Assembly: GCA_965202585.1 (NCBI GenBank)
Contig: OZ241833.1
Coordinates: forward strand, 30,566,001-30,630,000
Direction of reading: 5' to 3'
Source: Thalia democratica
Lineage: Eukaryota
DNA length: 64,000 nt
The notes under the pieces were generated by a model. It worked only from the letters and a program-made list of their open reading frames with translations. It was not told the DNA's origin and made no database searches. Both the position numbers and the translations under genes were made by a program. This document shows positions 34,239-60,300 of this stretch, in pieces (positions within the stretch are counted from its first letter, which is position 1; each line of letters opens with the position of its first letter).

Positions 34239-34629
34239 TTAAGAGGTATTTTCCCTTTTAACCGCGGCGTCGGCAGATTGGTTGCTCGTCGGAGCCTGCT
34301 GGGAGATTTGACCTTGTTGAGGATTTCCAAATTGGGGAAACCCCATAAAGGTGCGAAGGGCCACGGCGTTGTTAGAGAAGTTTGGCGCGAATATCAGGGG
34401 ATTACCCATGTTACCGTTTTGCAGTATCGGGTTGGGGAAAAACCCGCTCATTTGCGGGGGCTGGTTGCGCATGAAGAGGGAGGTGGCTGGGGAGGGAAGC
34501 TGGTAGTCGGCGAACGACGAGTTTCTGGTGATTCCCCCTTGGTTGCCGTGGGGAAGGTGCTCTCCCACGTACGTGGGCGTCAGGTCGTTGCGGTGGTGAC
34601 GACGCCCGATGTGACGCTGGCAGTTATAC
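34239..34629 (-). CDS. Zinc-finger gene terminal exon (end of finger 10; Pro/Gln/Asn-rich tail)
   Basis: cacacag|G TAT AAC TGC CAG CGT CAC completes [22 protein letters not shown]; stop at 34241-34239. Confidence 0.9.
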
Positions 34630-37600
34630 CTGTGTGACGTCATAGTATTGAATTATTTCAAAAACTTTATATTGGTTAAATCGTGCTGAAATTCTTTCTA
34701 TTAGTCAACTTGGTAAAAAATTATATTTTTCATATAAAAAACCTTGATGTTAAATTTAAACATCAGTAAGTAACTATTATAAATATTGAAAAGTTTAAAT
34801 TATAAAAAACAGAGCTTTTAAAAATTTGTAATCAGTAATTTTGTTAATAAATTTACTATTTGCTTAAGTTAAGATTTTTTTTTTTAATTTTCTAATAGCC
34901 TCAACTTGATACTTAAATTGTACAAACTTTTTTTTCAAATTCTAGATCATATTATTATTCATAGTATAACACTACTATGTTTAGTATGAAGTAAATAAAT
35001 AAAAAACATGCAAAAATATTCATGCAAAATTGGAACACGTTTAGAAGAAAACCTTTTAAAATCATGCAAATTTTAATCATGCTTATTTATTAGTTATACA
35101 TGCAGAAAACTTTATCACCAAAAAATGCAAAAAGCAATGACTTAATTGTAAAGCTAGAGAAAAACAATTTTTGGATAAGATCTTATAAAATAGGATTGAT
35201 TTTATCCATACTTGTATATCAAAAATACGTCATTTCGACAAACTTAAATGAAAGTTTTTAATTATACCTCTGTTTCAAGGTTTTTAACCATTTCAACATT
35301 AAAAATCATAAAAATGTGATTTAAAAATTCAAGGTAGCTGCTAGTTTGAGCTAAAATGATGTTTTTTTTAAGTACATAAGTGATTCACAGTCAATATTCA
35401 ATAAAAAAAAATTAAGTGATTTTTTTTTACAAAACAGGAACAATCAAAGTTCTTCAAGTGCTTGAGTTTGATGTCAAAAAAAAAACAATATATCACAGCA
35501 GTAATGAGAAAGTAAATGTCATAACTGAATAAATCATATTAAAAATTTCGACTCTTTGATTTCATCCAAAAAAAAGTATAAATAAGGATTTTGATTTTTC
35601 CAGGCAAAAAATAAATTTTTTGAATATATTTTTTTTGCGAAAAAATTAAATCCACGCAAGTTTTATTTCCTTTTGCAATCTGAGACAAAATAAAACCCAT
35701 TCCAAAAAAAAATATCGAATTCAGATCGAATATTTTCATTCAGGCAGTATAAAGGTCTATGCTGATTAGTCTTTTCAAAAAAAACTTTTCAGGCAAAATA
35801 AAGACTCATGTTTGGTCAGTATCAACAAAAAAAAATCCAGGCAAAAATATTTCAATCTGAGTCTTTTTGTTTTCATTCGAAATTAAAGTCCCTGGTCAAT
35901 TTACTTTGAAGTGAAGGGAGTCTCGCATTGGGGACATTCCCACGGATGCGGTACGTGATGCTCCGGAATGTGATCCTTGAGTGATTGGACGTCGGGAAAC
36001 ACCCGCTTGCAGAAGCCGCACGCGAAAGTTGATTGGTTCTTTAATTGATAGATCACGTGATTCAAGTGTGAAAATATTCGAGCCAATGAGAGAGGTGACA
36101 TGAAAGAAATTGCAGCGTTTCAATAGGATAAAAAAATAATGTTTTGGTTGTCTAAAGTTTTAACGACATTTAATGTGTGCTAAACAACATCAATTTAAAT
36201 TAAAAAATTATGTTAAATAAACGTTTACTAATTATTTAAAAACAGCTTACATTTTAACATAAAACAAAATGTTAAAATTTAAAGATTGCTGAAATAAGCA
36301 GAAAAATGAAGCGAAGCCACAATTCAAGTCGACAACAAAATGATTTTATAAAAAAAACAGATATATTTACAATATAAATTTAACTCTTTAAAAGTTATAT
36401 TACTTTCAAGTACAACATACCTTCTTTTTACTATTTCTCAATTGTTCAGTTGATCTTCGAGTCTGTTTTTTTTTTGTGATTTTTAATAACTTAAAATAAA
36501 CAGTTATATTAAAAATAAAAATGCAATTAAAGCCGCTTTTTGATTGACAAAAACAGTTATATCAAACTGTTGACCAAAGAACTCTGGAATATTGGAATTC
36601 GATACCCACACAGACTCGGACGTAAACATCTTTTAGGCTTAAAACTCGCAAAACAATAATTTAAAAATGAAGCGAAAGCACTGAAACAGCCAAACATGAA
36701 TTTTCGGTCTTGGAAACAGCACGAATACTTTACAATTTCCAGCTTTCAGGCGACATAGATTTTGTTTTGGCAGTCAACACTTTGTTATATCAACGTGTAA
36801 AGTAACCGACATTAAGGTAACTTGATGATGTGAATTCACCAGCTTTTTTACATGTGCAAGATATTAAAAAATGTTAAAAAAAAAAACTAACTTTTTTTTA
36901 AAGTAAACAATATTATTTTTCTGGAGACTAATATACTATTGCAAATCAGATTTAATTTAAAAGCAAACATTTATAACATAAATTCTTATTTTTAGTCAGG
37001 GTGTTTCAGTAAAAAAAAAATTTTTTTTTAAATTTTTGATAAAAAATCTAAAAAGTTTGAAGTTAAAATTAGAAAAAAACCTTAAGTTACTTACAATGAG
37101 TAAAAATGTGTAAACAACGAATTTAAAATACTATATATAGTATATTTACGACCAAGACACACAAAATGAAACAATTTAAGCCATAAGAAAAATAACAACA
37201 TTCAAAACAATAAACAACATTGAACAAGACAATGAACTGATTTTGGAGAGGTAAAGAAAAAAAATTGTTTTTTGATGCTTAAATATAAGCAACTACTCCA
37301 AAATCTACTTCTACAAAAGCAAGAAAGCATTACAAAAGGTTAGTAGTAAATGTTAGTGAAAATTTATACAAAAAAAGGTAATTAATAATAAAAAGTAACC
37401 TCCGAATTAAACATGAGTGTACAATTAATAAGGCAACATACACGAACTAATTAAGTAAATGTTATTAACAAAAAAGTGTTAAAAAACAACAAGCAACTTT
37501 GAATAATCTAGATGAAGCGGTCCACGGGTTGCCACAAAAACATCTCAAGAATTTTACCGAGAACTTTTTGATGTTAACAGAGTTTAAACTTGGGTTATTT

Positions 37601-40600
37601 TTAGAAAACATTTTATTTACGCCTTTTATTTGTTGTCTGTATAGCATATCTGTTTTATTTGCTTATGGGAATATTTATTGAGTTCAAAGAAACTTAAATT
37701 TTTTATTTAATTATTCAGCATGTTTTATTGTAAATATATATATTGCTTTTAGCGAAAATAGTTTTTATTTTTATCTGTTAAAGCAGTAATTTTATAATTT
37801 TTGTCTTAACAACTCTGCGCTTACGTACTCAATTTAATATCAACACAAGTAAAAACTCAAACTAAATATACAAGGCTCTTTGAAAATCTTATGTTACAAT
37901 TAAAACAGTGGCAAGCCTGGAAATAAAACCAAGGTTGCTACTCTTTGTGACAAGAATTTTCAGCCTGAATGACCATAAACTATTCTGAATTGCTTCAAGT
38001 TAGCCTACGTTGGCCTTAGTTTGTTATAAAAATGAAAAAATTGACCCAAAACTTAAAAAAATCACTGTTAACCAAGATGAAACACCTAGAACATAAATTA
38101 ATAACATAATTACATTTTAAAAACACAATTTTTAGAAAAAGAAGTTCTAAAAACTAGCCTGAGTTTCAGCAAAAACATTCAGTTTCACTTTAAAACATTC
38201 GAACAAACCTGAGTCAGCCAGAGTTTAAAGAAAAAAAGTTTTAACTGAATCGTTCTGAGCGTGTGGCAACCCTTGCGGAACAAAACACAAACAACGGAAA
38301 GCTACAACTTCATGCACCACCACACTCGCCACCCACTTTGCTGAACGCCTTCAGGTTTTTCTTCTGTCCGCCGGGTGGCGCCTTGCTCCCGCTTGACGAC
38401 GGGTCGTCGCGGACGATGTGGGGCTTGGACTTGGGTTTTATGGGCACCTTGATGCGCGTCACTATCCTCGGACGGGTCCTCTCCTCCGAAGCTTCCGGCT
38501 ATTTAATTGTGACGTCACAATAAATTCGTTGTCAGACGACGTTACAATAGTACGGAGAGAAATTTTTTAAACCGAGAATTTTTAGCCCGTTTTTATGCGT
38601 TTTGTGGACTTACTAAAGCGCATTGAATATCAATGTGAAAAATACTGGATGCAAATAAAATTTATAATTCATTGGGATGCATCGTCTATTTTTAACTGTG
38701 GTTCAGCGCTCATTTGAAAACAACTAAAAATATTAAAAACACAATGTGAAAGGTCAGAGTTTTATATTTTTCAATAACAGTCACTACAATCTGATAATCT
38801 TGTTATTAAACAGAAAATTAAGTGAAACAATAAATTAAAACTATTTATCATAGAAACACTGCTACACAGATTAAATTATTCGTTATAATGTTTTAGTAAT
38901 AAGTTTATCAATAAAGTAGAACAAAAATTATTACCCAAACACTTTTTGATAATCTATCTAAGTTGTAGTCCTTCAAACCTCTTTTTTTGCTAATTACATT
39001 AAAAGTCGAAATTAAACTGTTAGTCAAAACATTTATTCTTTCTTTTCAAAAGCGTTTCACTTTAATAGTATTATGATAAAAACTCAGACTTTTAATAACT
39101 TTGAATATTTTTTAAACTTAACTCCGCACCTTTCCTACAAAGCAAATTCCCTCCCTTACAACCCTTAAACAACTCGCAACAACCCCCGCCTATCAATAAC
39201 AGCGAAACGCTGCCTAGCAACCGACCTCGTCGTTGTCAGTGGAAACCTGCGAGTCCTCGTCCCCGCTACCGTCGGCCTCCTCCTCCCCGATCTTGCAGAC
39301 GAAGCCGTGCTTGCCGAGCCCCGTGTTCTTGATGTTGTGCTGGTTGCTGACGTGGCGGCACGCGTTGTTGCGCTTCGTGAACTCCATGTTGCATATCTTG
39401 CACTTGTACTCCTGCGCGAAATTTCATAATTAATTTCAACATGCTTTTGTTATAGTTTATTCTTTATGTATATGTTTGTTACCTCATAACATATTTATTT
39501 TTGTATTTTTTTATAAGTTGATGTTGCGTATCTTGTACTCCTGTGTGAAGTTTTATAATTAAGCAAAATAATTTCACTACAGGTTTATTCAAAAATCCAG
39601 GTTTTTCAGGATTCCAGGTTTTTTTTTTGCAGATATACATTTCTATATTGATGTTGTATATCTTGCGCTTGCACTCCTGTGTGCTTTTTATGTTGTGTAC
39701 AAGTAATTTAAAACATGATATTCAACTTTTCTAGACCATCAACATGCTTAGCCTACTACCAACAAAAGATTTTTCTACTTAATATAAATTATACCCTACT
39801 ACGAAACTAACTTTTACCTTTGCCGCCCTCATGTGCGCGGGAACTCCGGGTCCGTGGTACTCCTCCTCAAATTCCTGCTCGTAGCTTCGGTACTTTTTGG
39901 CGGGCGGACCGCTGGAGGGCGTTGCCAGCTTCCTCCTGCCCCTGGCAACCGGTTGCAGGGGCGTGGTCACCTGGTTGTCATGGCTGCTGTTCCTGGTGGT
40001 CCTGGTCGGTGTTGGTAAGGGGGTGGGGTTTTTCAAGGGCTGCCCGCGCTGCTCGGTGACCACCGTCGGGTCGATTTTCACCAGAAGTTGCTGTGGAAAT
40101 TTTTTTAAATAAAAACTGGATGAATGAAAAAGGTTTGATTTTTAAATCAAATCGAAAACATCAGGGATCAGATTGAGGAGCGTTTTGATTTTTATATCAA
40201 AAAATTCAGTATTAGATGTTCTACATTAATTTTACCGAAAAGCCAAGCGGCAATCTTTAACAAGTTTTTACAAAGTCATGAGACGGGTTTACTTTAATTG
40301 ACTTTTATCCGCTTGTAAATAATATTATTTTATTTATTTTAATTATATTTTCCTCACCTTGAAATCGGGGCTGTCCTTGGTGATGTTGTGCTGCTTGGAA
40401 AGGTGCCTGACCACATTGGAGCGGTTTGCAAACGGCACGTTGCATTTTCCGCACAAGTATTTCTGTTGCATAATAGTTTTTAATAATTTAAAGTCGAAAT
40501 CAATTTTAAACAATGCACAAGCATTACTTCCACAATGTTCTTACTGAACTAAAGCAAACTTTGGTATAAAAATAAATAAAAAAAATAAGACTCAATCAAA

Positions 40601-43600: not shown

Positions 43601-46600
43601 TTTTGTTAATTAATTAATCGTTGTGATAATGTAATAAATACAAGTATGACTTACTCATACGTATTATTACCTGTTCCTCGTGCGGGAGATGCACCACACT
43701 GTCAGCTTTGTTCGGCGAGTCCCTCTTAATCTCGTGCTGTTTGTAGGCGTGTCTCAGCAGGTTACTGCGCACCGTGAACCTGCGAACATATGAAATATTG
43801 TGAGTTTATATTTAGTTATTTGTAATTTAAACACGCAGGTGAAACGGTTGGCGTAGTTTAATTTTGAGCTTTGAAAGTTAAAAAAAATTATGTTTGGTAT
43901 GGTAGTTAACAAAAAGCAAAGTTTTTTTTTTTGATACAGAGTCAGCCAACCTATAAGCTTCATTCAGCCACGCTAACTTAGCTGAGATCTATTTGAACTT
44001 TTTAATGAAAAATTTTCACTCTTTCACCAACACATACCGCATTTATACACACAACAGTTATCATAAAAAAACTATACGGTTATTTGTATAAACTAAAAAA
44101 ACTTCTCGATATACCGAAATGCAAACAGCTGTTTAAATAAAAATGAGCAAACTAAACAGTTTATTAACCACCGAAACCTGGCAGGAAATAAAATATTTAA
44201 ATTGCACATTTTTATTTTATTTCTTTTTATAAAAAAAACTCTCACCTAATGTCGCAGTGGGCGCACTTGAACCCGCGCAGCCCCATGTGTCCCTGGATGC
44301 ACTTGACCAGGGCGGACTTGTACCAGTACCTCCGCATGCACTTCAGGCACTTCACCTGCTCGCTCATCCTCCTCTCCCCCGGCGCTCCGACGTCGTCCGT
44401 GACCATGTTGGTCAGTCTGGGGGAAGGCCCTGTTGATGTAGTCACGTGATTGTTACGCTTTAGCGGTTAGGTTAATTGTTCATGTTGTTTTTTGTCAATT
44501 GGGGATGAGTATATGAAAAACTCTGTGACGTCATATAAAAGCGTAAAATGTTTGATAAGAGGAAATGATCATGTGTATTTATTAATTTGACTACGACACG
44601 TTTCATAAAACAATGTTAACGTATCAAAATTGCTCAATTTTTTTGTTGACCCTAGTGGGCTTCTTATATCACACAAATTAAAACAACAACCAAACACTAA
44701 CTTGAGCCCATGTTGATCATAGTGGGCAGGCTGTTTGCCAAAACTTCCTTCATCGAAGTCGCTTTCGTCGGCTTCTTCTCCCTGATTGTATTTTGTTCTT
44801 ATATATTGAACTTTTAAACATAAAACTTTATTAAAATTTTTAACCTTAAGGAAACAAACAATTGTCACTGTACTTCATAGTATTAAGTTTGTTAGACATT
44901 CTTATAATTTTGAATGAAAAAAAGGTTTGATGGATAAACATTATTTTATAAAAAAGTAAATTTATTTTGGTTTTTCCAATTTTTAACTTCTCATGATAAA
45001 TCTAATTAATTAAAATGCAACTTGTAAAAAACAAACAAGTAATTGACAAACTAACTTTTTAGCTGATAAAGTGCTAGACGGTGGTGGCAATATGGCGTCC
45101 ATCGAAGACTGAAATATCAATTACATAATAAGTATATAAACGTTTATACACATGTATACAAAACATTGTTAAGAAAAATAATACTGACTGGCTTCTTGTA
45201 TGAGTTACCATTGAAAATATTTCAATTGAGATTATAATTCTAAAAACTGTACAAACAAATAAGTAAAAACAAATATGTTAAATGTAATTGAAATACCTGA
45301 ATGTAGTTCTGGCTCATGAAACTGCTGTTGTTCAGCTTCTTCAAATCTTCAAGCAAATGTGTAGTACCTTAAAAATTAAAACAACTATAAAAAAATTGCA
45401 CTAATTGTAGCAGTATATCAAACTTAGTTTTGTTTTATTTTATTCAAAGTTAAGCTTTCTTCTTAAATAGATCAGGAGGAAATGCCAGAACGTATTTTTG
45501 CACAAAACTAATTATAACAACTTCTAACTTTTAAAGCTGTTTTTCGCAGTCTGCTTTGGCAATATTGGCGGGTAGCTTTTTTGATTGTTGAAACGAGCAC
45601 CTGTACAAAAATAATATATTTTACTTAATTTTATTTAATATATTTTATAATTTTAAAACTATAAAGAACGTTAATTAGATATCTACTTAAAATTTTAGCT
45701 TTTTTCATTCAAGTTTTCAAAAGGAAGTTTGTTTGACTAACAAGATGTAAAAAAAATCTTTCACAACTTTAATTAAAAGTTATTAACTTTTCACTAAACA
45801 ATTACTAATTTCTAACCCAAACAAATAAACTTACAAAACTTGTGTTCTTAGCTAATTATTTAACTTTAAAGCCAACAGAAAACTTTGGTTCTCTAATTCT
45901 TGTAGAAGTTTTAGGGTCAGTTTTTTATTTTCAAACATTTTTTCTGATAAGACTACTCAAAAACAAAAAGTAAATCAAAAATACCGGCAGACGTGGACGG
46001 AATGCTGTTCCTGTTGTTTCGAACTTCTTGAGTGTGTTTGTTTTGAGTGGATGTTGACAGGTGAGCGTTTGAAGTGAAGTTGAATCCTGTGAATTTTTAA
46101 CCTTTAAACCTACTTTTCAGCTGTTATTGAGTTTTTTAATATATGAAATAAAGCTAAATTGCTTTTTTTGTGTATTATTTCTAACAACTTATAGGTCACT
46201 TGTTAAAACTTTTAGCTCAAATAAACAAAACTTTTTTAACACATATATATATTTTACACGAAATAAAACCAAGCTCAACTGCTTGTTCGACTACCTGATT
46301 GCGGTGTTTTCTTCTTACTACTGCCTCCTTGCGGCTGATTGTTCAAATTTACTTGCTGCACCGCCGCAGCCGTCAGAAGGGAGAAGAGCTTCGACCTCAT
46401 TTGCGCTACATTCTGATTGGCTGAAAATACAAATAAATTGTTATGATTGGCTATTTAAGAAGTTAACAAATGTTTTCCTGCTTTAAATGGCTTTGATGGT
46501 GTAAGATAACAATATTGATTTTAAAATTTGAGTTATTAACAACAATGTGCTAAAAACCTAAACCTTTTCTGCCTGCTTTAGTTTTTGATTGTTTTAAGAT

Positions 46601-49600
46601 TTAGCAAGTTAGCATTTGAAAAATTCTTAGATATCTTTTATAGTTGATAAAAAATTTAAATGGTGAAATATATCAATAAGTAAACTTTTAATTTGGCTTA
46701 TCATTCAATGTATACAAATACATAAAGGTCGTGTAAAGTTGAAGTTTTTTCAATTATTAATATTGAAGACAATTCACATTCACCTTTATTAAAAATTTAC
46801 GCACAAGCAATAAACATGAGGCGTCTAAGGAAGTGGATAATAATTATGTTATCACGTTTGAAAGCATGCGAACATCTTGTTTTACACGTAATCAGATTAG
46901 TCAGGCTTTTGTGTTAATACCAACGCAATACACATCATCATGAAATTTCCATGACACAAAACTAACACATCAGCATGGAAAAAATATTTAAAAATTTTGT
47001 TTTTATTATAGAAAACGCAATAATATTTGCTATATAAAATTTATAAGCCTTTTGTTTTATAATATATTTTGAACAAACTATCACATTTTCTGACCCAAAC
47101 AAGAATAATTTGCACCTGATTTAAATCAAACTTACCCTAGTAACCCCAAAAAGAAAGGAATTCTAACAACAAACTAATTTTAAATACACCTGATGTTTTA
47201 ACATAGGTTGCTGTTACTACTTGAGAAAATCGGACCTTTTAATAATTATTTGTTGTCGAATAACCCAGCATTAAACTTACGGATGCACTTTTTGCCCTTA
47301 AAAAACACAGTTTTATCAAGTATAATAAAGTGCTTTACTTCAGTATGGTCTATTCAAACTCAACATTAACTGTATTTAACATAAAACATACTCAACTTTC
47401 ACACAAACCGTTTTTAACGCAGCCGACGACTTGCGAGTACTCCTTGTCAAACATGCTCCTCATCTGCTTGGTGGCCGCGTTGAACGCGTTTATTTTCTCG
47501 AACGGAATCAGCGGACGGGCTTTCCACAGGTGAACCACCTCCATCATGGTTGCTGATTTCATCGTGTCTTGGTACTGATAATGATTATGATTATTTTGTT
47601 TAAAATTCTCAAGTATTTAAAGTATTATTTTTTGTTAATTTTTTTTATTGTGTCGTGATTCTGATGAATAGTTATTAGGTAAGAATGAACATTCGCTTCT
47701 TTATATAAATTTCTAGAACCAAAATATTTTTATTTAAACGAAATATTTTGATAAAACAGTCTTTTGAAATTCAAAGAAAATGAAAAGTTTTTACAAACAA
47801 CAAAAAATAATTCTGAAATACTTTTGTAATGAATTTTAAACGATTTCGATCATGTAATCAATTCAAACCGACCACATCATTCGTATCCTTGTTGAAGTAA
47901 TTAGCGAGGTGTCCTTCTTTGAGGAACTGATGTTTTCCAAGCAACGATTTGGTGTCTGTTGATATTTTGTCAACTGATTTTCTCAACACCCTGGTGCTTG
48001 ATCTGCTGCTTCTACTTGCCTCTGCTAATAGTAGTTAATAGATATTTAAAAGTTTGTGATGAAAGACGAAAATTTTAAAAGTTTTAGTATAGATACGGGT
48101 GATAAAGTTACTAGGGTTTAAAATAAAACTCAGACTTAAAAAGGCATATAAAACAAAAATTAATGGTTAGCACGGTTTTTTAGTAACTATTTTCACTTTT
48201 TTGTACCTGCACCACACCTTTACTTTTTACTGATAAAAAGTCACTTATCAAAATATTATCAAGCCAACTCAAACACCGTTAACATTTGCCCTAAAAAAAT
48301 ACATATATGACGTCACAAACCGCTATTGTCCTTCCTGGTGTGCATGTGGTGGGTGGAGGGTAATACCCTGACATGGGAATCGACGTCGTTCTCGACCGAG
48401 TGCTCCTGCTTCAAATGCTGCACGAGTTGCTGGTGAGAGGAGAACACTTGATCGCATATGCGGCACTTCGAACTGTGGGGATGTTTTTTTATTTAAATTA
48501 AGTTGAGTTGAGTTGTTTGAATTTAACAAGCTTTGTACTGAAAAACATACTAAACTGTAACCGTAAAAGTTCGAGTTGTTATACCAAGCTTTTAAAAAAA
48601 TATTAAAAATTTGCTTATGTTTAATGTACATCAACCATTTCATCTTATATATACTTATTTTGATAAAAAAATTTCAGCAAACCAATAGTCAAACCTGTAC
48701 GGCCGATGCCTCTGCCTCGGAGTTGTTCCGTTGGGCATGTTAACAATTTCAGGTTTCACCACGTAATGCCCCTCCTTCAATTTGCGAATTTCATCGTGCT
48801 GCTCTGATACCTGCATAGTTGTTGTTGTGAATACTGAATGTTAACAAGTGGCAGATATTAGCTTTGAATTGAATTGTTTGATACAAAAGTTGTTAGTAAT
48901 TGTTGTGGAAATTGAGTATTCAACAGTGGAAAATTTTGGTTTTGCATTAAAAGTTTTGACATCTGAATTAACTTGTTGTGAAAACCGAGCATTTAAAAGT
49001 GTTAACGATCAATGTTAAGATTATAAAATTCTGACATTTGAATGTCAAATAATGTTTAAAAATATCTTAAAGTTTAGTTTCAAATTGTCTCAATGTAATG
49101 TTTACAATTTTTTTATGTAAACTAATAGTCTTTGTTGCAACAGTGTTGTAATAAAAATACCTGCATAAATTTTGTAATGTTTACAAAGCTTAGAAATCTA
49201 TAGAAAAATACTTTAAGTGAGAAATCTATTTTATTTTGCTTCAATTTTTTAAAGTGATAAAATACAGCCTAAAATTTAAAGTAAAAAATCAGGTTAATAA
49301 ATTTTAGTATTTGTAAATCTCAATAAGCTTGCAAGATGTTTTTTTATTAAATAAATATTAGAGAAAAGCCTATGTATGCACCTGAATTTAAAACATTTTG
49401 AGTTAAAAAAGCGGTTAAAAAAAAGAGTCAAAACCGCAAAATACTTTCAACAAAAAAAAATTGTTGAAGAAGATGCGAGAAAGGCCATTGTTCATCCGGA
49501 AGTGACTCATTGTGACGTAATAGTAGCCAGTGCAAGCTGAAAGTCTTTGTGATTCACATTTCATGTTATTAATATTCCACACATACAAATTACAAAAAGT

Positions 49601-52600: not shown

Positions 52601-55600
52601 ATTCACTCACACATACAGACTTAATTGTTAAAGTAATAGAGCTTGCTCACAAAGAAAATTAGATGTTTCTGATACTATTAAGGAAAATTTTTTAATTTTT
52701 ATAAAGTCTAATACACACAAAACTGCTTTTTGATAAAGCCAAAAGTATTTTTTTATCAGAAACAAAACTAATAAAAAGTTTGAATTGTAATACAGCGCCT
52801 GAGCTAATTCCCAAACAAATAGAAAAGCTGAATTTTTCAATTAAGCGTTCAGCAGAAGTTTTCCGTTTTGCACACGCACAAGACTCTAAAACGCTTGAGA
52901 GCGCCAAAGAATTGAGAAACTGTGCCTCTTTTAACTTGCTGCGCGCATGAATATTTAACCTTATAACAGAAGATCACAAAAAGCGATGGCTTGAAGCTGG
53001 CAATATTTTTGAATTTTTCGGGGAATTGTAAAAGTTATACAGTTTTAAGCTTCTGATACCCTTCGAGCCCGGCAACACATCAACAATACGTTTTAAAAGT
53101 TTATCGTGTATCATTTAAATTTATATTCCGTTAAATGTTTCATATAACTTTTAAACTGTAGATATCACTAAAAAGTGGGCTTATTTTTCTTATCAATAAA
53201 CTTAAAAACGAAATTACCCATCATTACCTTGGTTTATTGAGTAAAAGTATAATCAATGTGTTTATTGACCGATAAGTTTTATCTGCTACAAATACAAGCG
53301 TAATATGTAAACTCAAACAATTTTTTTTTAATAAGAGCTTATGAACGCTGCAACAGACTACGCCTAAAGTTTTGAGAAGACATTCAAGTTCTCGCTTCCA
53401 GACTTTGAAAGCGTCGATGAAAAATTGCAGTTCAGCGCTCAAACTTAAAATTATGCTGAACTCAGCAACTTTTAAAATTTGCGTTCAATTCTCAGCATTA
53501 TCACGACAGGTGTGTTTGGATGAAAGTCTCTGCTAATGCCAGTTGCTCTTACTAACTTTTTTCAACTCAAACACAAATTTGTGCTTTTTAAAGCACTTTT
53601 AATACTTGAACGAATATTTTTCTTTTTATTTAATAATATAAACTCGTAGTACACAAAATAAAGTTGTTTTATTTATACATTTAATTATTTATTAACTTCA
53701 ACGTGTTAAAGCTTTAACTTTAGGTTTCACTCAAATATTCAAATATAGCTACACTTATTTTGTAGATGCCAAAGGAATAAGTCATTTTAATCATCGTGAC
53801 ATTTAAAAGCAGAATACATTTCGAATCTATGCTTCTTATTTTTTTTGTATGCGAACTAGATTCTATTAAGTCTTTGTTTATTTTAAATTTAAAGCAAAAG
53901 TAAAATTACAACGTAGACCGGTGTTTCCGAACGAACTCCCAGTGATTTTAAACCAACCAAACCACTAAATTTTATACAAATCCCTACTAAATTCATTACA
54001 ATATTACGCATTTTGTTAAACTTTCTCAAATAACTACCAATCAATTAATCTCATAAAACACAATAAGTTTTAAAAAAATTTTTGTTTAAGAATATTAGAG
54101 TTACAAATACTTCAAAGTAAGAAAATTCTAAATCTTGTAACTCAAGAATGTAAAAAAATTGAGACTCACAAAACAATTTTGTAGCACTAAAAAGAAATCA
54201 AGATACGATCCATCATTTAAAATATACGAGATGAAATTTGCTTCGGGCTATTTAACATCAGGGATGCAGTTTGGTTAGAAGAAAGAAAAATTTGAAAGCA
54301 TTTGTCATCAACGAAGCAATTTTCATTTGCTATACAAAAGAAGTTTAAATACTTTTTTGAATACTTTTTTTTTTTTTTACATTTTTAATCTTTTTACCTG
54401 TATCAAAATTTCACAACTTTTGCTTATCAGGTTTGTATAGTATATATTTAATGTCAAAAAAGAATTCAACCCAACTTAGTTTTTACAGAAGTATAGTCAT
54501 GATCTAACTAGCTTCAAACTACATACAAAATGTTTTATTTATCAACAACCTCATAATTCAAATGATAGTAGCTTAGTAACTTTGAAGAAAAAACACAAAA
54601 GCCAATTAAAAACTGAAATGTGCCTACAATCAGAAGAATTTTATACTGAGCCGTTTTTCTAAGAACTTGCGGTGGCATTATTTCAGACTTAAGATGCTTG
54701 TGTATTTTTTAAACTTAGCACAACAAAGCTCTAATAAGTCCTAGAATTATCAAGTTTGAAAAATCAAATTAACTTTTTGCTAAAACATTATTTAGCGAAC
54801 CTTATTGTTGCTGCTAATTACTTTTTACAGCTTTTTACTGGTTTACAATTTACACGTTATAAAGTACGTCATGCAGTCCAGATTATATTGACCGGGCTGA
54901 TTTTTTAACTAATAATTACTTCAACAAATAATATTTTATATTAACTATGGTTCATAAAAAGCTTATTTTAACAAACCGCAATCTACTCATTGCATCTATT
55001 TAAATTCAATTCATTTACTTTAGTTTTAGTTAACTTATGTATAGTAAAAAATAACCAGGAGCAAAACAATTTATCCGTTCCCAACAAACCAAGCGGTATG
55101 ACTTTAGTAAGTACATAGAAACTAGTAATTAATGTTATTTACTTTTACATAACTTGCCATTTTTCTCTGTTGTACATTTTTTTTACTGAAAATTATAATA
55201 TATACTTTAAGCTGACCAGGTTAAAATTAATTGGTCCATGCACTGTTTATTTATTTTACTTTATTCTTAAAACACCAACTCGTTTCATATATGAAAAGAT
55301 ACATCAAGCTGCATATAATGTCTGGTTGCAACCCGCTATACTTTAATTTTACAGATAACACTCAGGCACACATAAAAATAACTTATCTACTTTTATTAAT
55401 ACAACTTTTAATTATTTTATCAATTAAGTCTTTAACTAGTGGGTCTTCTGGAATTTTTAAACACACTATATCCGTAAAACTTTCAAATCACCTTTTTGAC
55501 TACAGTTTACTATCTGATAAACAATTTGGTTTTGTCCCCAACCGCTCGTCAAATATTCAACTATCAAACTAGGACAATAATGTTAATGATAACACCTACT

Positions 55601-58600
55601 AATAACTTACACCTGCTAATAGCTTAGCTACTTTTGTATAAATTCAAAATACAAACCAGGAACGACAATCTGTCCGTCCTCCTTGTTTCGCATCCACCCG
55701 GGCAACTTGTGGAATCCTGGCGGCGGTGACGTCAGCACGTAGTCGTTGTTGGTGCCGTACCTGATGTCTGCACGCACCGGCTCCACAAAGGTTTCTGTGC
55801 GAATGGAAAGTTGATAAATGTTAAAAAAATCACAAAATTTTATTGGCTCTATTGGTTTTGTATGTATAAAAACAACTTGTTTGTTGAAATTTTACTGTTT
55901 CAGTTGGTTCTGAGTTAATAAACAAAAAGTTAATTAACTAGCTCATGTTAAAATAGCTTGATAACTTAACTTCACTTTGTATGGTTTTAGTTGTGTTGTT
56001 GGTATCGACAAAATAGAGTATAAAGATTGTAAAGAAAATAAAAAAAAATGTGTGTTAGTATAAGATTAAATTTAAATTCAAAAAAATCTATAAGAATTGA
56101 TGTTAAATAAAAATTTAAATAGGAGTGTAAATCTGCGAGCACAAACTGAAAACTTCTCAAAGAAGTGCAAATGAGGTCCAAAAAAGCAAAAGAAACAACA
56201 GCTGTGACCACAACAAAAAAAGGACTTAAATAATCCAAAATCTTATAACAAAAAGACCAATAAGATACTGAGTGAAAATTCTACGAACTTGTGATTAAAT
56301 ATTTGTAACACGAATGAGTCGCTGTTAATTTGCTATACATTTTCATTTAAAAAAACGAATTTTTATTGGTAGCAAATCGTTTTTTCTCGTGACAAGATTG
56401 CGTGCCAAGCTTAGCACGAAGTGAAGATTTTCGAAGAAAAAATCCTTAGCACGCTGACATTTTCTTTGCTTCTTTACAAAACTCGTGATATTTTAGCTCG
56501 TTCGATTTGTCGCGACTTTTTATATTAGTTTTAAGAAGATGTGCAGTAGATTACTTATACAACTTACTAAAAAATTATTCTAATATATCTTTTGTTATTA
56601 GTTATGTAAATTAACACCTAACTTTATTCGGAAACATTTATTAATCAAAAAGAAATTTTAAGAAATAAATAAATGTCATTACACAAACCTTGTTTTAGCA
56701 CAACTTAGACAGCAACTTCATTTATAAGCTATTTAATTATTGACAAGTTATAAATAATTATGTTTTAAAAACAAGAAATCACCAACCTTGTCTCACTTTC
56801 TTCCTCGGCACCAAGCCCAGCAACTTGGCCATCTCCGGCGTCAGGTTCGTGTCTTTCGGAAAACTTTCCTCTTCCTCGCGCTCGACCGTCACCACGGGTT
56901 TCGGGGGCTCGCCGGTGGTGGCGCTGTGGCACAGGGCGGGGTGCTTCAGGTTGAAGTGCTCGTTGAGAGTGGCGAGCGTCGGGAAGTTCAATTCGCATAT
57001 CTTGCATATGAACACGTTGTGGCCGGTCTTGTCCATCAGCAGGTGGGGGTCGTCGGTGCACACGGTCTGTTCGGTCGGTTGATGTAATATATTTACTTAC
57101 TTGATTTTGTTAAATTTTATTTGGTCAACTTCATTTTTCAACTGGTGCACACACCGGTTGTGTATTCCGTTGATAAATTAGAAAAAATTTATGTGTCAAG
57201 AGATCTAAATTCCAAATTTCTTTTTTTTTAATTTTTAATAAAGATGCTAACATAAACGTTCCATAAATTTAATGCAAGCTAAACTGCTGCTGGTTTTGAA
57301 AAACGCTTTGTAAATTTTTTAAGTCAAGCTTATCTTTCGAGATGTTACTTGTGTAGATTAAATACCAATGCCAAACATTGGCCAAGTAGCAGAAGAAGGC
57401 TAGGATTTTTTAATAACTGTGCAAAGTTTCGACTACAAATTAAGATTTAAATACTTTTTAGTAATCTTATAACAAACTAATTACTTTTATTGATAACTAA
57501 GTAAACAAAGAATTAAAACAAGTTAACAATAAGCTACCTTCAAAAATATATATCAATAGCATTTGTTTTTTTAAATTTTCAAATTAGAAATAAAACAAAC
57601 AACCTCGGCCAGCCTGGGAAAGACTTCCGCCGAAAACTCGAAGTCCGCCAGATCTCCGAAACCGTGAATGTAATCCGACTTCTTGTACTTCTTCGGCGCT
57701 ATCTTCGGCAGCTGGAACGCCTTCTCCTGCTTGACGTTTGAAGCGCTCTTATTGGCTGGTTTCTGGTTTTGCACGTTCCGGGTGGTCGCGCTTCGCCTTT
57801 CTCTGGGCACAAACGGCTCTATGGCGTTTATCGTTTCAGTTGTTTCTGCGCCGTTTTCTACGATTTCATTTGTTGTTTCAAAGCTTCCTTGTCTTTGATT
57901 GGCCGCGTCAATGGTCTCTGTACTTTCGTTGGCTGCTTCATTTTGATTATCAGCTTCTTGGCTTGCACCAGCAGTCTCTGTGATTTCTTGGTCAACATCA
58001 TTTATCTCTGGCTTTATATCATCATCATCAAACTCGACTATCTGAAGATCGCCAATCGAATCGTCCAAATTTAAATTTAAATCCAGATCTCCACTTGTGT
58101 TATTTTCTATTTCTCCATATGTGTTATATTCTGTTTGACCATTTGTGTTACTTTCTGTTTCTCTATTTAGATTTAAATCCAGATCTCCATTTGTGTTATT
58201 TTCTATTTCTCCATTTGTGTTACTTTCTGTTTCTCCTCCATTAGTGTTATTTTCTGTTTCTCCATTTGTGTTATTTTCCTCTATGATCAAACTGACTTTT
58301 CTACCGGGTTTGATGTTTCCGTTTTTGTTTGTTTCTTTTACCTGCTCAACTTCTTCATTTGGTTTATCTTCCTCGTTTGTGCTCAATTCTTGGTTTGTGT
58401 TATTTTCTTCAATCATTTCGACTTCTCCGTTTGTTTTGTTTTCTCCACTTGGAACAATTCCAATAACATCACCTGTGGCAGGAACATTTTCTTCTTTTAT
58501 TCTCGTCACAGAAACTTTATCTTTGTTTTCGTTGACATGAAAATTTTCAGTGCTCGTTTTCTCGAATGCCTCTTTTACTATTTCGACATTGGGAATTTTC

Positions 58601-58818
58601 CTTCCGTTCACACCCTCGTCCGTTTCCATGGCAACCACCCCGTTCTCCTTCAGGGGGGCCGGACGCTCCGTGGCGCCATTTTCCTCCCCGACTTCCATTT
58701 TCACTTTGCCAGCCTCTGATTGGTTCATTTGCTCGCTTCTTATTCCTGATTGGTTGTCTTCCGCGGGCGTCATTGTGACGTCATAGGGAAGTTGGTTTGA
58801 CGACAGTTCGTTGCTCAT
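34239..58818 (-). CDS. RREB1: RREB1/Hindsight(pebbled)-like multi-C2H2 zinc-finger transcription factor; 25 coding exons, 4869 nt, about 1622 aa, 10 dispersed fingers
   Basis: All 24 introns are GT-AG with consistent phases. The finger pair [33 protein letters not shown] carries the [10 protein letters not shown] signature I recall from Hindsight/RREB1; related fingers [40 protein letters not shown]. Orthology not tested. Confidence 0.75.
35905..36038 (-). CDS. Zinc-finger gene exon 24 (finger 9 and start of finger 10)
   Basis: attaaag|AAC CAA...TCA AA|gtaaat. Confidence 0.88.
37523..38275. mobile_element. Degenerate element bounded by GGGTTGCCAC inverted ends
   Basis: cacgggttgccac (37523) and gtggcaacccttg (38263-38275); no clear TSD. 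Confidence 0.4.
38337..38498 (-). CDS. Zinc-finger gene exon 23
   Basis: taaatag|CCG GAA...AGC AAA|gtgggt. Confidence 0.82.
39226..39411 (-). CDS. Zinc-finger gene exon 22 (finger 8)
   Basis: cgcgcag|GAG TAC AAG TGC...GAC GAG|gtcggt. Confidence 0.9.
39818..40090 (-). CDS. Zinc-finger gene exon 21 (Pro/Thr-rich, basic patch PPAKKYR)
   Basis: tccacag|CAA CTT...GCA AAG|gtaaaa. Confidence 0.87.
40358..40462 (-). CDS. Zinc-finger gene exon 20 (finger 7)
   Basis: gcaacag|AAA TAC TTG TGC...TTC AAG|gtgagg. Confidence 0.9.
40602..40745 (-). CDS. Zinc-finger gene exon 19 (Ser/Asp-rich)
   Basis: atttcag|GAC GAG...GTT AAG|gtttga. Confidence 0.82.
42305..42330 (+). mobile_element. Possible Helitron 3' terminus
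   Basis: cacgtggccgggtaaCTAGT resembles GC-rich subterminal motif plus CTAG; hairpin weak, no 5' end found. Confidence 0.35.
43129..43302 (-). CDS. Zinc-finger gene exon 18 (acidic, internally repetitive VAMEE units)
   Basis: tgcacag|GTC CAG...CAG CAG|gtttgt; 58 codons. Confidence 0.82.
43671..43779 (-). CDS. Zinc-finger gene exon 17 (end of finger 6, [15 protein letters not shown])
   Basis: ttcgcag|G TTC ACG...GAA CAG|gtaata. Confidence 0.9.
44246..44429 (-). CDS. Zinc-finger gene exon 16 (variant finger 5 and start of finger 6)
   Basis: tcaacag|GG CCT...ATT AG|gtgaga. Confidence 0.87.
44702..44781 (-). CDS. Zinc-finger gene exon 15
   Basis: caatcag|G GAG AAG...TCA A|gttagt. Confidence 0.78.
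45056..45108 (-). CDS. Zinc-finger gene exon 14
   Basis: atttcag|TCT TCG ATG...AAA AA|gttagt. Confidence 0.75.
45297..45367 (-). CDS. Zinc-finger gene exon 13
   Basis: ttttaag|GT ACT...ATT CAG|gtattt. Confidence 0.78.
45529..45600 (-). CDS. Zinc-finger gene exon 12
   Basis: tgtacag|GT GCT...AAA A|gttaga. Confidence 0.75.
45985..46086 (-). CDS. Zinc-finger gene exon 11
   Basis: ttcacag|GA TTC...GCC G|gtattt. Confidence 0.8.
46295..46420 (-). CDS. Zinc-finger gene exon 10
   Basis: ttttcag|CC AAT CAG...TCA G|gtagtc. Confidence 0.8.
47409..47574 (-). CDS. Zinc-finger gene exon 9
   Basis: ttatcag|TAC CAA...AAC G|gtttgt. Confidence 0.82.
47873..48024 (-). CDS. Zinc-finger gene exon 8
   Basis: ctattag|CA GAG...GAT GTG|gtcggt; donor chosen to match phase 0 of the next exon. 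Confidence 0.75.
48321..48472 (-). CDS. Zinc-finger gene exon 7 (finger 4 [22 protein letters not shown])
   Basis: ccccacag|T TCG AAG TGC...AGC G|gtttgt. Confidence 0.9.
48695..48810 (-). CDS. Zinc-finger gene exon 6
   Basis: tatgcag|GTA TCA...TAC AG|gtttga. Confidence 0.82.
49496..49520. promoter_or_regulatory. Intronic ETS + AP-1 + ATF motif cluster
   Basis: CCGGAAGT (49496), TGACTCA (49503) and TGACGTAA (49513) within 25 bp; not a phase-compatible exon. Confidence 0.6.
50284..50428 (-). CDS. Zinc-finger gene exon 5 (TGVRP linker and finger 3)
   Basis: atttcag|G CAC CAC...GAC CTG|gtttgt. Confidence 0.93.
50889..51027 (-). CDS. Zinc-finger gene exon 4 (start of finger 2, [16 protein letters not shown])
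   Basis: ataacag|CA GCA (NAGNAG alternative at 51024)...CTC AG|gtgcgt; phase 1 to 2. Confidence 0.85.
55050..55600 (+). mobile_element. Decayed non-LTR retrotransposon (CR1/L2/Jockey-like) reverse transcriptase fragment
   Basis: [45 protein letters not shown] resembles the LINE RT block PISLTS...L.NHL...LLS..QFGF..GRST..QL; upstream PNKPSG resembles NKSPGPD. Confidence 0.7.
55657..55794 (-). CDS. Zinc-finger gene exon 3
   Basis: cgcacag|AA ACC TTT...CCT G|gtttgt; phase 1 to 1. Confidence 0.85.
56787..57066 (-). CDS. Zinc-finger gene exon 2 (finger 1 [22 protein letters not shown])
   Basis: gaacag|ACC GTG...CAA G|gttggt; phase 0 to 1. Confidence 0.9.
57604..58818 (-). CDS. Zinc-finger gene coding exon 1 (acidic low-complexity N-terminus with NNTNGE repeats)
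   Basis: Acceptor ctcaacag at 58826, ATG 58818, donor GCC GAG|gttgtt; 405 codons. Confidence 0.85.
58070..58290 (-). repeat. Coding tandem repeat (E-x-E-N/S-N-T-N-G units; duplicated [16 protein letters not shown] block)
   Basis: Repeated tttctccatttgtgtta units; atttaaatccagatctcca occurs twice. Confidence 0.85.
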
Positions 58819-60119
58819 CCAATAACTGTTGAGAATTAATTTTTAGTTTTTCACATTACATAGTGCAATAAAGTATTTTCAGGTGAACTAATTGGTTTAA
58901 ATCAGTAGTATATTTATTCTAAGTTGTTGTATATCCTATATTTTATGAATATAACTAACACAACTTGTCCAGCACACACATTTACAAATATATTCATATT
59001 TAATTTTTTTTTATAAATAATAAGTCTTTAGTTAAGCTACAGTTTAAATGTGTAACTTTAACTACTATTTTTTCAATGAGAAGAAATTGTGGGGCTTAAA
59101 AGTTAGAAAGTTGAAATATTTGATCTTGAATTAATTAATTTTTTAATTTAATATCATTTGTACTATATTTAATGATATTGTTTCTAATGCAAAATATGTA
59201 TTATACTTTATGATTAGATGTTCTGTATTTTATTAGGATTCAACCTTAAGTTTAAAATAGATATAACCATATTATATCTTTATCTATAACATTAATTAAT
59301 TGTTAATTTAATTTAGCATGTACCTCTTCTATTCGATCTTACTGGTGTACTGATAAGCTTACAAGTAGAAACTACAATAAAAATCAAACAAACTTTTAGA
59401 AAAGTGAGTGAAAAATAAAGTTATATTACGATAAACGTTTTGAATTAAACTTACAAGCAACTGTGAAAATTACTGTGAAATATTTTTTGTAAAGATTTGA
59501 AGTGAAAAATACAATAATGCCTAAGCTTAAAACAAAAACATTAAGTTTTTATTTTAATTATTAAAACCTTATTCACTTTTGAAGCTTTTTTTCTGTTTTA
59601 TACTTCAGTAACTTTAAGCTTTTTCTTTAACTATTTTTCAAAAAACTTTAGACTTGAAGCTTAGAATTAGAGTTTGCATTTTGGTAAACAACAACATAGT
59701 TATGTAGCATTTTTGTGTTGCTGGTCATTGTTATTTTATTTAAACTTGTTTTAAACAGGACCAAAACAAGCAAGTAAACTGAGAGGCTGCTGACAAATTT
59801 TACAACTTTTTAACTAAGATGTAAAAACAGACTACTGCTTAAAATAGCTTATCAAGTAGTTTGACGAAAGATTTTAGTACTTGTCAAAGTTTAAATGAAC
59901 TTAATATTACGATGTTATTAAAAACAAACGGTAAAAAACATTTAGGTTGGCTTAATTTTATTTTTTAAATCAGACTAAAAGAAATAAAACTTTATTTGGG
60001 AATCGTTTGATGGCCAGTGTCTAAATAAAAAGCATAAAAAAATTTAAAACTTATCAGGAAAACTCGTTTCTTTAAAATCAAATCTTTCAAATTCACTTCA
60101 ATAACTTGTAAAACAAAAT

Positions 60120-60300
60120 CACGGGGAGAGAGGCGAAATTGGGCAACTTTTAATTGAGCGTACACATGCAGTACATATATAAGAAGCCGCGCGCAGAGAG
60201 GAAGTCGTCAGAAGATCTCGCTTCAGTCGTGACGTCACAATGCGAGCAAGCGATGAAGTATTGCCGTGCGGCTCGTCGGGCAGTTTTTTTTTTTTCAGAA
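60120..60300 (+). promoter_or_regulatory. TATA/CRE promoter island inside the zinc-finger gene 5' intron
   Basis: TATATAAG 60176-60183, initiator-like TCAG about 30 nt downstream, TGACGTCA 60230-60237, dense CpG. Confidence 0.6.

What the first reader, a model, noticed from the sequence alone, without database searches (positions are those of the whole stretch)
34629..60237. Palindromic CRE and E-box motifs packed against splice sites of the zinc-finger gene
Seen: I find seven TGACGTCA octamers (34635, 38510, 44526, 48308, 55727, 58776, 60230), all in the zinc-finger locus and none in 1-34 kb, plus TCACGTGA at 36053 and 44442. Five of the nine sit within about 15 nt of a splice site: tatgacgtcacacag| (last exon), ttgtgacgtcacaattaaatag| (exon 23, a 16-bp perfect palindrome ATTGTGACGTCACAAT), tcacgtgatctatcaattaaag| (exon 24), tcacgtgactacatcaacag| (exon 16) and |gtttgtgacgtca (exon 7 donor). 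They occupy the place of the pyrimidine tract. At an assumed 25% GC about 0.3 TGACGTCA is expected per 64 kb. Established: these are CREB/ATF and USF/TFE sites. Inference: either DNA-bound factors mark exon borders (chromatin-splicing coupling, internal promoters for short isoforms), or the motifs act as RNA splice elements. This is my best candidate for an undescribed system.
Basis: partly seen in the sequence, partly recalled or inferred. Interest (0 to 1): 0.75.

Follow-up and report, generated by a model that had tools for sequence, protein, structure and literature searches.

The report
CRE octamer hugging salp exon borders
In this salp zinc-finger gene, and in an unrelated stretch of the same genome, the 8-letter palindrome TGACGTCA sits in the first few intron letters next to exons far more often than composition allows and is kept in related salps, so it is a real, selected signal whose reader (DNA-bound factor or RNA) is still unknown.

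Summary
All nine motif positions are correct. Five lie 5-14 nt from a splice site on the intron side, and two of those acceptors are confirmed by RNA junctions.

- **Not chance:** against 551 composition- and CpG-matched 8-mers in 264 kb, TGACGTCA is about 160x enriched in the 25-nt intron flanks, 17x in exons and 6x elsewhere (p=4e-8). This holds in an independent region (p=3e-5).
- **Specific:** no other GC-rich palindrome behaves this way.
- **Conserved:** the acceptor copy at 34635 is 15/15 identical in a distant salp contig whose neighbouring intron is only 57-69% identical.
- **Not repeats:** the two flanks tested (38510, 48308) are unique in the genome.

- The window is not unusual for this genome (56,755 copies; 4.5 expected per 64 kb).
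- Many copies elsewhere lie in tandem or repeat cassettes, which other scan notes read as snRNA-type promoters.
- The E-box TCACGTGA is not enriched genome-wide.
- The 60230 copy is an ordinary CRE-TATA promoter.
- Under 1% of donors carry the word.
- This species has no pyrimidine tract to replace.

This scan has already found exon-embedded TGACGTCA on other DNA of the same genome. The mechanism is unresolved. I favour a DNA-bound bZIP-type reader (0.4) over an RNA splicing element (0.3).

The parts
34239..60237 (-). Multi-exon C2H2 zinc-finger gene (about 26-27 GC-rich exons in AT-rich introns) that carries all nine motifs
   Evidence: GC-island segmentation and open frames. Pfam zf-C2H2 hits on exon translations; exon 35904-36038 passes the zf-C2H2_4 cut-off. 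RNA junctions.
60230..60237 (.). TGACGTCA in a promoter-like position, 48 nt upstream of a TATA-like box
   Evidence: Sequence read on the minus strand. Its role as a promoter is an inference; no RNA data were laid here.
60175..60181 (-). TATATAT box downstream of the 60230 CRE
   Evidence: CRE at index 63, TATATAT at index 119 of the minus-strand stretch that starts at 60300.
58776..58783 (.). TGACGTCA inside exon 2, 42 nt after the acceptor at 58826/58825. It reads Tyr-Asp-Val-Thr if the ATG at 58818 is used.
58717..58753 (-). Two NF-Y-like RRCCAATCAG boxes 30 nt apart, just downstream of the 58776 CRE. They may be an alternative promoter module or coding Asn-Gln-Ser repeats.
55727..55734 (.). 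TGACGTCA inside a coding exon (Leu-Thr-Ser), about 60 nt from either edge
48308..48315 (.). TGACGTCA at intron position +6 of a donor (exon ...AGCG|GTTTG-TGACGTCA-TATATG)
   Evidence: The flank 48130-48319 is unique in the genome.
44526..44533 (.). Intronic TGACGTCA 96 nt upstream of the acceptor at 44430/44429, abutted by TATAAAAG on the + strand
44442..44449 (.). TCACGTGA 12 nt upstream of the acceptor (ctacatcaacag|GGCC)
38506..38521 (.). 16-bp perfect palindrome containing TGACGTCA (38510-38517), ending 11 nt before the RNA-verified acceptor. The exon starts at 38498.
   Evidence: Junction 39226>38498. The flank 38499-38680 is unique in the genome.
38337..38498 (-). Exon defined by two RNA junctions
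36053..36060 (.). TCACGTGA 14 nt upstream of the acceptor of a cassette exon, flanked by CCAAT boxes. It is kept in the 90%-identical Tara contig L051 while the 3 nt next to it differ.
35905..36038 (-). Cassette exon coding a C2H2 finger. Skipping it joins 38337 to 34629 and gives an immediate stop.
34635..34642 (.). TGACGTCA ending 5 nt before the RNA-verified acceptor of the last exon (TATGACGTCACACAG|GT). It is conserved in two other salp-like contigs.
34239..34629 (-). Coding part of the last exon

Best explanation
TGACGTCA is a sequence-specific, selected cis-element of this salp genome that is read as double-stranded DNA by a dimeric CREB/ATF-type bZIP factor.

At 60230 it works in the ordinary way, as an upstream promoter element next to a TATA box. 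The same word marks many tandem or repeat cassettes elsewhere in the genome. In this zinc-finger gene, further copies are kept by selection inside exons and, preferentially, in the first 5-14 intron letters next to exons.

I infer that a factor bound there acts during transcription. It could work as an intragenic enhancer or internal promoter, or as a roadblock that slows RNA polymerase at the exon border and so helps exon recognition. That might matter in a genome whose introns are 75% A+T, whose donors read GTTTG, and whose acceptors lack a pyrimidine tract.

Shown here:
- the positions of the motifs;
- their enrichment at exon borders beyond composition;
- the specificity of the effect to this one word;
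- conservation of one copy across salps;
- that the two flanks tested are not repeats.

Inferred, not shown:
- that binding affects transcription or splicing.
For: - **Palindrome and flanks.** The word is an exact 8-bp palindrome. On its free (intron) side it prefers TA (9 of 11, p=5e-7), giving TATGACGTCA. From my own knowledge this resembles the ATGACGTCAT optimum of ATF/CREB dimers.
- **Perfect copies dominate.** The perfect palindrome (24 copies) outnumbers every one-mismatch variant (at most 15). This fits selection for a full dimer site.
- **Promoter use.** The 60230 copy has classic CRE-to-TATA geometry. Large tandem or repeat families each keep the octamer amid diverged flanks. Other agents of this scan read such families as U1/U6-type promoter cassettes (s1-281708, s1-291863; AI notes, only partly checked here).
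- **Clusters.** Full sites occur with half-site variants such as TGACGTAA/TTACGTCA, and pairs of copies lie 25-30 bp apart. This is the look of homotypic factor-site clusters.
- **Reader present.** bZIP genes are encoded: 11 PF00170 matches at E<=0.001, all over the curated cut-off.
- **Sequence-specific.** No other GC-rich palindrome is enriched at exon borders: 2 hits among the other palindromes with at least 4 G/C, against 8 for TGACGTCA. Recognition is therefore by sequence, not by 'any RNA stem'.
- **No RNA structure.** There is no significant local RNA structure (z from -1.8 to +2.1).
- **Selection.** TATGACGTCACACAG is 15/15 identical in L052, where the adjacent intron is 57-69% identical.
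Against: - A DNA-bound activator gives no obvious reason for nucleotide-scale hugging of splice sites (donor +6 to +9; acceptor -5 to -14). That geometry is what one expects of RNA splicing signals.
- No occupancy, accessibility or transcription-start data exist.
- Conservation next to an acceptor could partly reflect the 3' splice signal itself.
- Only a small share of donors genome-wide carries the word: 656 GGTTTG-plus-motif hits. Any role in exon recognition is therefore not general.
- The local sample is small (24 copies in 264 kb), and one of its two regions was chosen because of this very finding.
Confidence: 0.4

Rival explanations
1. The border copies act in the pre-mRNA as intronic/exonic splicing enhancers or silencers. 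UGACGUCA next to the 5' or 3' splice site would be bound by an RNA-binding protein, or would pair with a near-copy in the neighbouring exon, and so tune use of that site. Its identity with the promoter CRE would then be coincidental or secondary.
For: - Enrichment peaks in the 25-nt intron flanks (about 160x) and is also present in exons (about 17x). This is the distribution typical of splicing regulatory elements.
- The spacing is tight: donors +6/+8, with manual readings of two further C1 donors at +7/+9; acceptors 5-14 nt.
- Genome-wide, 23 of 100 listed GGTTTG-N(0-30)-motif hits have gap 0, against 3 expected (p=1e-13; 5e-6 after collapsing tandem copies).
- The acceptors concerned are in alternative use: exon 35905-36038 is skipped in one RNA form.
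- This genome lacks a pyrimidine tract and has weak GTTTG donors, so auxiliary signals are plausible.
- At 34635 and 36053 the predicted folds pair the motif with a near-copy in the exon, looping the 3' splice site.
Against: - An RNA-binding protein has no reason to need an exact DNA palindrome.
- Other palindromes are not enriched, which argues against a purely structural stem.
- The folds are not better than shuffles.
- Most motif-bearing introns have a single copy, so bridging the two intron ends is not general.
- Many genomic copies lie in tandem or repeat cassettes away from exons, where a splice signal has no obvious role.
Confidence: 0.3
2. The border position has no function of its own. 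The word is simply frequent in and around the GC-rich, selected parts of some genes, through exon duplication that carries flanks along, coding Asp-Val/Thr-Ser codon pairs, or a local mutational or conversion bias. The few intronic copies would be spill-over. The two E-boxes would be chance.
For: - The window's count is ordinary for this genome (P=0.17).
- Motif counts on the exon side and the intron side of GGTTTG are similar (540 against 656). As a share of all copies of the word, both are close to the same share for the reversed control.
- The two donor copies in the C1 thrombospondin-repeat gene lie on neighbouring paralogous exons.
- The E-box is not enriched genome-wide.
- Most of the roughly 30 paralogous exons of that gene have no trace of the word.
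Against: - Matched control words put 2.3% of their copies in flanks, against 33% for TGACGTCA (p=4e-8). This still holds in the independent region with the paralogous pair counted once (p=4e-4).
- A 50%-GC, CpG-containing word sitting on the AT-rich side of the border is the opposite of compositional spill-over.
- There is cross-species conservation of 15/15.
- The gap-0 peak at donors is sharp.
Confidence: 0.2
3. The border copies are relics of mobile elements. They could be terminal inverted repeats of intron-generating transposons (the donor GTTTGTGACGTCATA mirrors the acceptor TATGACGTCACACAG), or palindromic excision footprints of the form TA-TGAC|GTCA-TA.
For: - The intron-side flank is TA at both intron ends, so intron termini look like inverted repeats.
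- The word is a conserved core of many repeat families.
- Tandem motif-bearing sub-repeats begin some introns (L019-L021, L026-L027).
- MITE-derived introns are known in another tunicate, Fritillaria. This rests on my own knowledge; the one paper I opened (PMC13326754) only mentions introner transposons.
Against: - The flanks of the 38510 and 48308 copies are unique in the 802-Mb genome.
- No local similarity exists between motif flanks apart from paralogous exons.
- Spacing to the splice site varies (+6 to +9; -5 to -14).
- Introns usually carry the word at one end only.
- Footprints cannot explain in-frame exonic copies or promoter copies.
Confidence: 0.05

Closest known systems
cAMP-response element (CRE) bound by CREB/ATF bZIP dimers
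   Same: The 8-bp palindrome is identical. One copy (60230) sits upstream of a TATA box as in textbook CRE promoters. Clusters with half-sites occur, and bZIP genes are present.
   Different: Most copies in this gene are not at a promoter. They lie inside exons or within 5-14 nt of splice junctions. Perfect palindromes outnumber the variants. No binding data exist.
Intronic and exonic splicing enhancers, for example G-triplets just downstream of vertebrate 5' splice sites
   Same: The word is concentrated in exons and in the first tens of intron nucleotides at both splice sites. It is found at a minority of sites and next to weak or alternative sites.
   Different: Known elements are single-stranded RNA words, degenerate and not palindromic. 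Here there is one exact DNA palindrome that is also a promoter word in the same genome.
DNA-bound roadblocks that promote exon inclusion (CTCF at CD45 exon 5)
   Same: In concept, a sequence-specific DNA-binding protein near an exon border could couple transcription to splicing.
   Different: This is only an analogy. A different factor and motif are involved, and there is no evidence for pausing here.
Transposon-derived introns (introners; MITE introns of the tunicate Fritillaria)
   Same: A tunicate genome in which intron ends show mirror-image sequence.
   Different: The flanks are single-copy. There is no fixed distance to the junction, no target-site duplication, and usually only one end carries the word.
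MiT/TFE-USF E-box (TCACGTGA, CLEAR-like)
   Same: The palindrome is exact. Two copies lie 12 and 14 nt upstream of acceptors, one of them flanked by CCAAT boxes.
   Different: It is not over-represented in this genome (0.8x of its reversed control). Only two sites exist, so no system can be claimed.

Membership tests
CRE / CREB-ATF binding site | Exact or near TGACGTCA palindrome | tested here: met
   Seven exact copies. The free-side flank prefers TA, giving TATGACGTCA.
CRE / CREB-ATF binding site | Position within roughly 150 bp upstream of a transcription start, often near a TATA box | tested here: inconclusive
   Met by sequence for 60230 (48 nt upstream of TATATAT), but no start-site data exist. 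Not met for the six other copies, which are exonic or at splice borders.
CRE / CREB-ATF binding site | A cognate bZIP factor is encoded by the genome | tested here: met
   11 PF00170 matches at E<=0.001, all over the curated cut-off. Which one is a CREB/ATF orthologue was not determined.
CRE / CREB-ATF binding site | Occupancy by the factor and cAMP/stress-responsive transcription | not testable with these tools
   No ChIP, ATAC or CAGE data for this animal.
Splicing enhancer/silencer (ISE/ESE) | Positional enrichment near splice sites beyond composition | tested here: met
   8 of 24 copies lie in 25-nt flanks, against 2.3% for 551 matched words (p=4e-8). The independent region gives p=3e-5. 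There is a gap-0 peak at GGTTTG donors.
Splicing enhancer/silencer (ISE/ESE) | Acts on the sense RNA strand only | not testable with these tools
   The word is its own reverse complement, so strand cannot be read from the sequence.
Splicing enhancer/silencer (ISE/ESE) | Mutation changes splice-site use | not testable with these tools
   This needs a minigene or a natural variant with RNA data.
Introner / transposon-derived intron | Many similar copies of the intron or its ends in the genome | tested here: not met
   The flanks of 38510 and 48308 match only themselves in 802 Mb. No similarity was found among local motif flanks.
Introner / transposon-derived intron | Terminal inverted repeats at both intron ends at a fixed distance, with target-site duplication | tested here: not met
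   Usually one end only, with variable spacing.
E-box (USF/MiT-TFE) as part of the same system | Over-representation and border association like that of TGACGTCA | tested here: not met
   3,680 genomic copies against 4,813 for the reversed control. The only other E-box inside the 264-kb sample (C1a position 195393) is not near a splice site.

The most novel reading that the evidence does not exclude
In salps one exact octamer, TGACGTCA, may be an exon-border and exon-body mark laid over the genetic code and over splice signals. It is the same word that other notes of this scan place at snRNA-type promoters. It would be read co-transcriptionally, on DNA or on nascent RNA, to help define GC-rich exons in a 75% A+T genome that lacks pyrimidine tracts and has GTTTG donors. 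This would be a second, sequence-specific layer of exon definition not described in any animal.
Probability: 0.25. Interest if true: 0.85.

Novelty: new variant of a known kind. Interest (0 to 1): 0.66.

Why it matters
If the border copies are functional, a classical transcription-factor word is being used, under selection, at the exact places where exons begin and end. That would give a concrete, mutable handle on how transcription and splicing are coupled. It would also bear on how exons are recognised in an extremely AT-rich chordate genome with unusual splice signals.

It also cautions annotators. In this genome TGACGTCA is a common, multi-purpose word found at promoters, in repeat cassettes, in exons and at exon borders. 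Raw counts against a random model overstate how special any one locus is.

Tried and rejected
- **Chance or composition.** Rejected by matched-word controls.
- **Any palindrome / RNA stem.** Rejected. Other GC-rich palindromes are not enriched, and local folds are no better than shuffles.
- **Repeat or transposon copy.** Rejected for the two flanks tested and by local BLAST.
- **Hidden small-RNA genes next to the motifs.** No Rfam family was found in the window or in 150 kb of C1.
- **Pairing of copies at both ends of one intron.** Not seen in the short introns inspected.
- **Branch-point reading (UGAC).** It could fit acceptors but not the donor copies.
- **More cross-species tests.** Protein searches with exon 16 and with the exon 2 N-terminus found nothing. 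A JGI metagenome scan found no relative.
- **A larger genome sample.** U1 loci could not be cut out for the same reason, so I could not read the U1 5' end against the GTTTG donor consensus.
- **Literature.** The Salpa genome paper PMC10686999 has no mention of TGACGTCA, CREB or palindromes. PMC13326754 has nothing on salps. A full-text search listed no paper pairing TGACGTCA with the splice-site terms among those shown.
Full report
**Observation.** The window holds seven TGACGTCA, at 34635, 38510, 44526, 48308, 55727, 58776 and 60230. Shuffles expect 0.34, and none lie in 1-34 kb. It also holds two TCACGTGA at 36053 and 44442, with 0.32 expected and 4 of 100 shuffles reaching two. The region is about 25-31% G+C, with sharp GC-rich islands that are exons. 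All nine motifs lie in a minus-strand, multi-exon C2H2 zinc-finger gene.

**Where each copy sits.** On the gene's strand:
- 34635 ends 5 nt before the last exon.
- 38510 lies inside a perfect 16-bp palindrome and ends 11 nt before an exon.
- The two E-boxes end 14 and 12 nt before exons.
- 48308 starts at intron position +6 of a G|GTTTG donor.
- 44526 is 96 nt upstream of an acceptor.
- 55727 and 58776 are in coding exons.
- 60230 lies 48 nt upstream of a TATATAT box, the textbook CRE-promoter layout.

**RNA check.** Marine metatranscriptome contigs laid on 34201-40200 give GT..AG junctions 38337>34629, 39226>38498 and about 39817>39410, plus a contig over 35902-36041. The acceptors next to 34635 and 38510 are therefore real, and the one next to 36053 is consistent with the RNA. 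Exon 35905-36038 is a cassette exon. Skipping it gives an immediate stop, while including it restores the C-terminal fingers.

**Is the border position more than chance?** Inside the gene, five of nine motifs fall in a zone that is 3% of the span (P=3e-6). For a wider test I segmented the window plus an unrelated 200 kb (C1:100001-300000) into 96 exons with refined splice sites.

| Class | Copies of TGACGTCA (of 24) | Enrichment per word vs 551 matched 8-mers |
|---|---|---|
| 25-nt intron flanks of splice sites | 8 | about 160x |
| Exons | 6 | about 17x |
| Elsewhere | 10 | about 6x |

- The 551 control 8-mers have the same base composition and one CpG. They place only 2.3% of their 1,190 copies in flanks (p=3.7e-8).
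- The independent region alone gives p=3e-5, or 4e-4 with a paralogous exon pair counted once.
- By eye the sites read as exon|GTTTG-, |GTTAG- or |GTATTA-TGACGTCA-TAAT at donors, and TTA-TGACGTCA-N(3-12)-AG| at acceptors.
- Among all palindromic 8-mers with at least four G/C, the others together have 2 flank hits. The effect is therefore specific to this word.
- Genome-wide, GGTTTG followed within 30 nt by the word occurs 656 times. 23 of the 100 listed hits have gap 0, against 3 expected.

**Putting the count in proportion.**
- The genome (802 Mb; other notes of this scan call it a salp) has 56,755 copies, against about 4,500 from base composition and 9,487 for the reversed word.
- TCACGTGA, with identical composition, has 3,680 copies. 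The CRE word is therefore about 15x commoner, and the E-box is not enriched at all.
- At 0.071 copies per kb, 4.5 copies are expected in any 64 kb, so the window is ordinary (P=0.17) and the gene mildly rich (P=0.003).
- A listing of 100 copies along 3 Mb of C1 shows that, outside the gene-rich start, most belong to tandem or dispersed repeat families that keep the octamer amid diverged flanks.
- Earlier agents of this scan describe such arrays as U1/U6-type promoter mini-genes (s1-281708, s1-291863). Others report the word packed into coding exons of large secreted-protein genes (s1-291890, s1-311170, s1-311194, s1-281717). First readers noted it at lamc1 acceptors and elsewhere (s1-274458, s1-317368). 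The phenomenon has thus been found before on other DNA of this genome.
- Motif counts on the exon side (540) and intron side (656) of GGTTTG are similar and small. Well under 1% of donors carry the word, so it is sporadic and concentrated in some genes.

**Selection and origin.**
- A Tara Oceans contig (L051, 90% identical over 3.2 kb) keeps both the 34635 CRE and the 36053 E-box, although the three bases beside the E-box differ.
- A more distant contig (L052, protein 69% identical) keeps TATGACGTCACACAG 15/15. The 60 columns before it are 57% identical, and the whole aligned intron is 69% identical. P is 2e-4 to 4e-3, with the caveat that acceptor-proximal bases are often constrained.
- The intron flanks of 38510 and 48308 match nothing else in the genome, and local motif flanks share no similarity apart from paralogous exons. 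They are not transposon copies.
- In a C1 gene with about 30 paralogous thrombospondin-type exons, only a few borders carry the word and the rest show no decayed trace. This argues for sporadic gain or retention, not inheritance from a repeat unit.

**Mechanism.** Two readings remain open.
- *A DNA reader of CREB/ATF bZIP type.* This is favoured by several points. The word is an exact palindrome with a TA preference on its free side. Perfect copies dominate over variants. Promoter use is clear at 60230 and in the repeat cassettes. Clusters with half-sites occur. bZIP genes are present. Other palindromes show no such effect, and no significant RNA structure is predicted.
- *An RNA reading.* This is favoured by the nucleotide-scale spacing to both kinds of splice site and by the exon-plus-flank distribution. 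The alternative use of the neighbouring exon also fits. So do this animal's weak core signals: donors AAG|GTTTGT, and acceptors with A/T-rich, G-poor upstream sequence instead of a pyrimidine tract.

I put DNA-level reading at 0.4, an RNA element at 0.3, no border-specific function at 0.2 and a mobile-element relic at 0.05. The two E-boxes may belong to local promoter-like modules, since CCAAT boxes flank 36053 and two NF-Y-like boxes follow 58776. With two sites and no genomic enrichment they cannot be tied to the CRE phenomenon.

**Verdict.** This is a CRE-identical word in an unprecedented, selected position at exon borders. It is part of a genome-wide salp peculiarity that I found reported in none of the papers I searched or opened.

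Noticed in passing
window 34000-60400 and L031-L050 (96 predicted exons): The 5' splice-site consensus is AAG|GT(T>A)(T>A)G(T), with GTTTGT the commonest form instead of GTAAGT/GTRAGT.
   Followed up: partly
window and L031-L050, acceptor positions -20..-5: Acceptors have no polypyrimidine tract. The composition is about A 42%, T 36%, C 12%, G 6%, with CAG| at the junction and often a short C/G-rich run just before it.
   Followed up: partly
window 35982, 36030, 40650, 46414, 46444, 57896, 58717, 58747: Eight of the nine CCAATCA heptamers in the window are on the gene's sense strand and inside the zinc-finger gene, several right at exon starts (for example cag|CCAATCAG at 46414). They could be NF-Y boxes or Asn-Gln-Ser / Ala-Asn-Gln coding.
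   Followed up: no
window 35905-36038 and junction 38337>34629: A cassette exon codes a C2H2 finger. The skipped form seen in metatranscriptome contigs runs into a stop two codons into the last exon, giving a truncated isoform.
   Followed up: partly
G000:C1:0.7-3.3 Mb (listing only): Several abundant repeat or tandem families (units of about 1.1-1.5 kb in places) each keep TGACGTCA within otherwise diverged sequence, often followed 10-12 nt later by an AAT(C/T)GCAAT-like block.
   Followed up: no
G000 genome-wide; many hits at C1:98.3-99.1 Mb: The 14-mer palindrome TTGTGACGTCACAA occurs 395 times, against 2 for its reversed control, with a dense cluster on C1.
   Followed up: no
L046-L050 (C1:258-285 kb, minus strand): A gene with about 30 consecutive 135-138-nt thrombospondin-type-1-like exons (C-x-D-C ... 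W-S-x-W). Several of its donors and acceptors carry the octamer or one-mismatch variants such as TTACGTCA-CAG|.
   Followed up: partly
L019-L021 and L026-L027 (C1:302.5 kb, 333.0 kb): Some introns begin with short tandem arrays (units of about 13-60 nt) that each contain TGACGTCA or its CpG-decayed forms TGACATCA/TGATGTCA, directly after a GTTAG donor.
   Followed up: no
window 44526-44541 (+ strand): The intronic CRE is directly abutted by a perfect TATAAAAG on the + strand, antisense to the gene, 76 nt from the E-box. This could be an antisense or internal promoter module.
   Followed up: no
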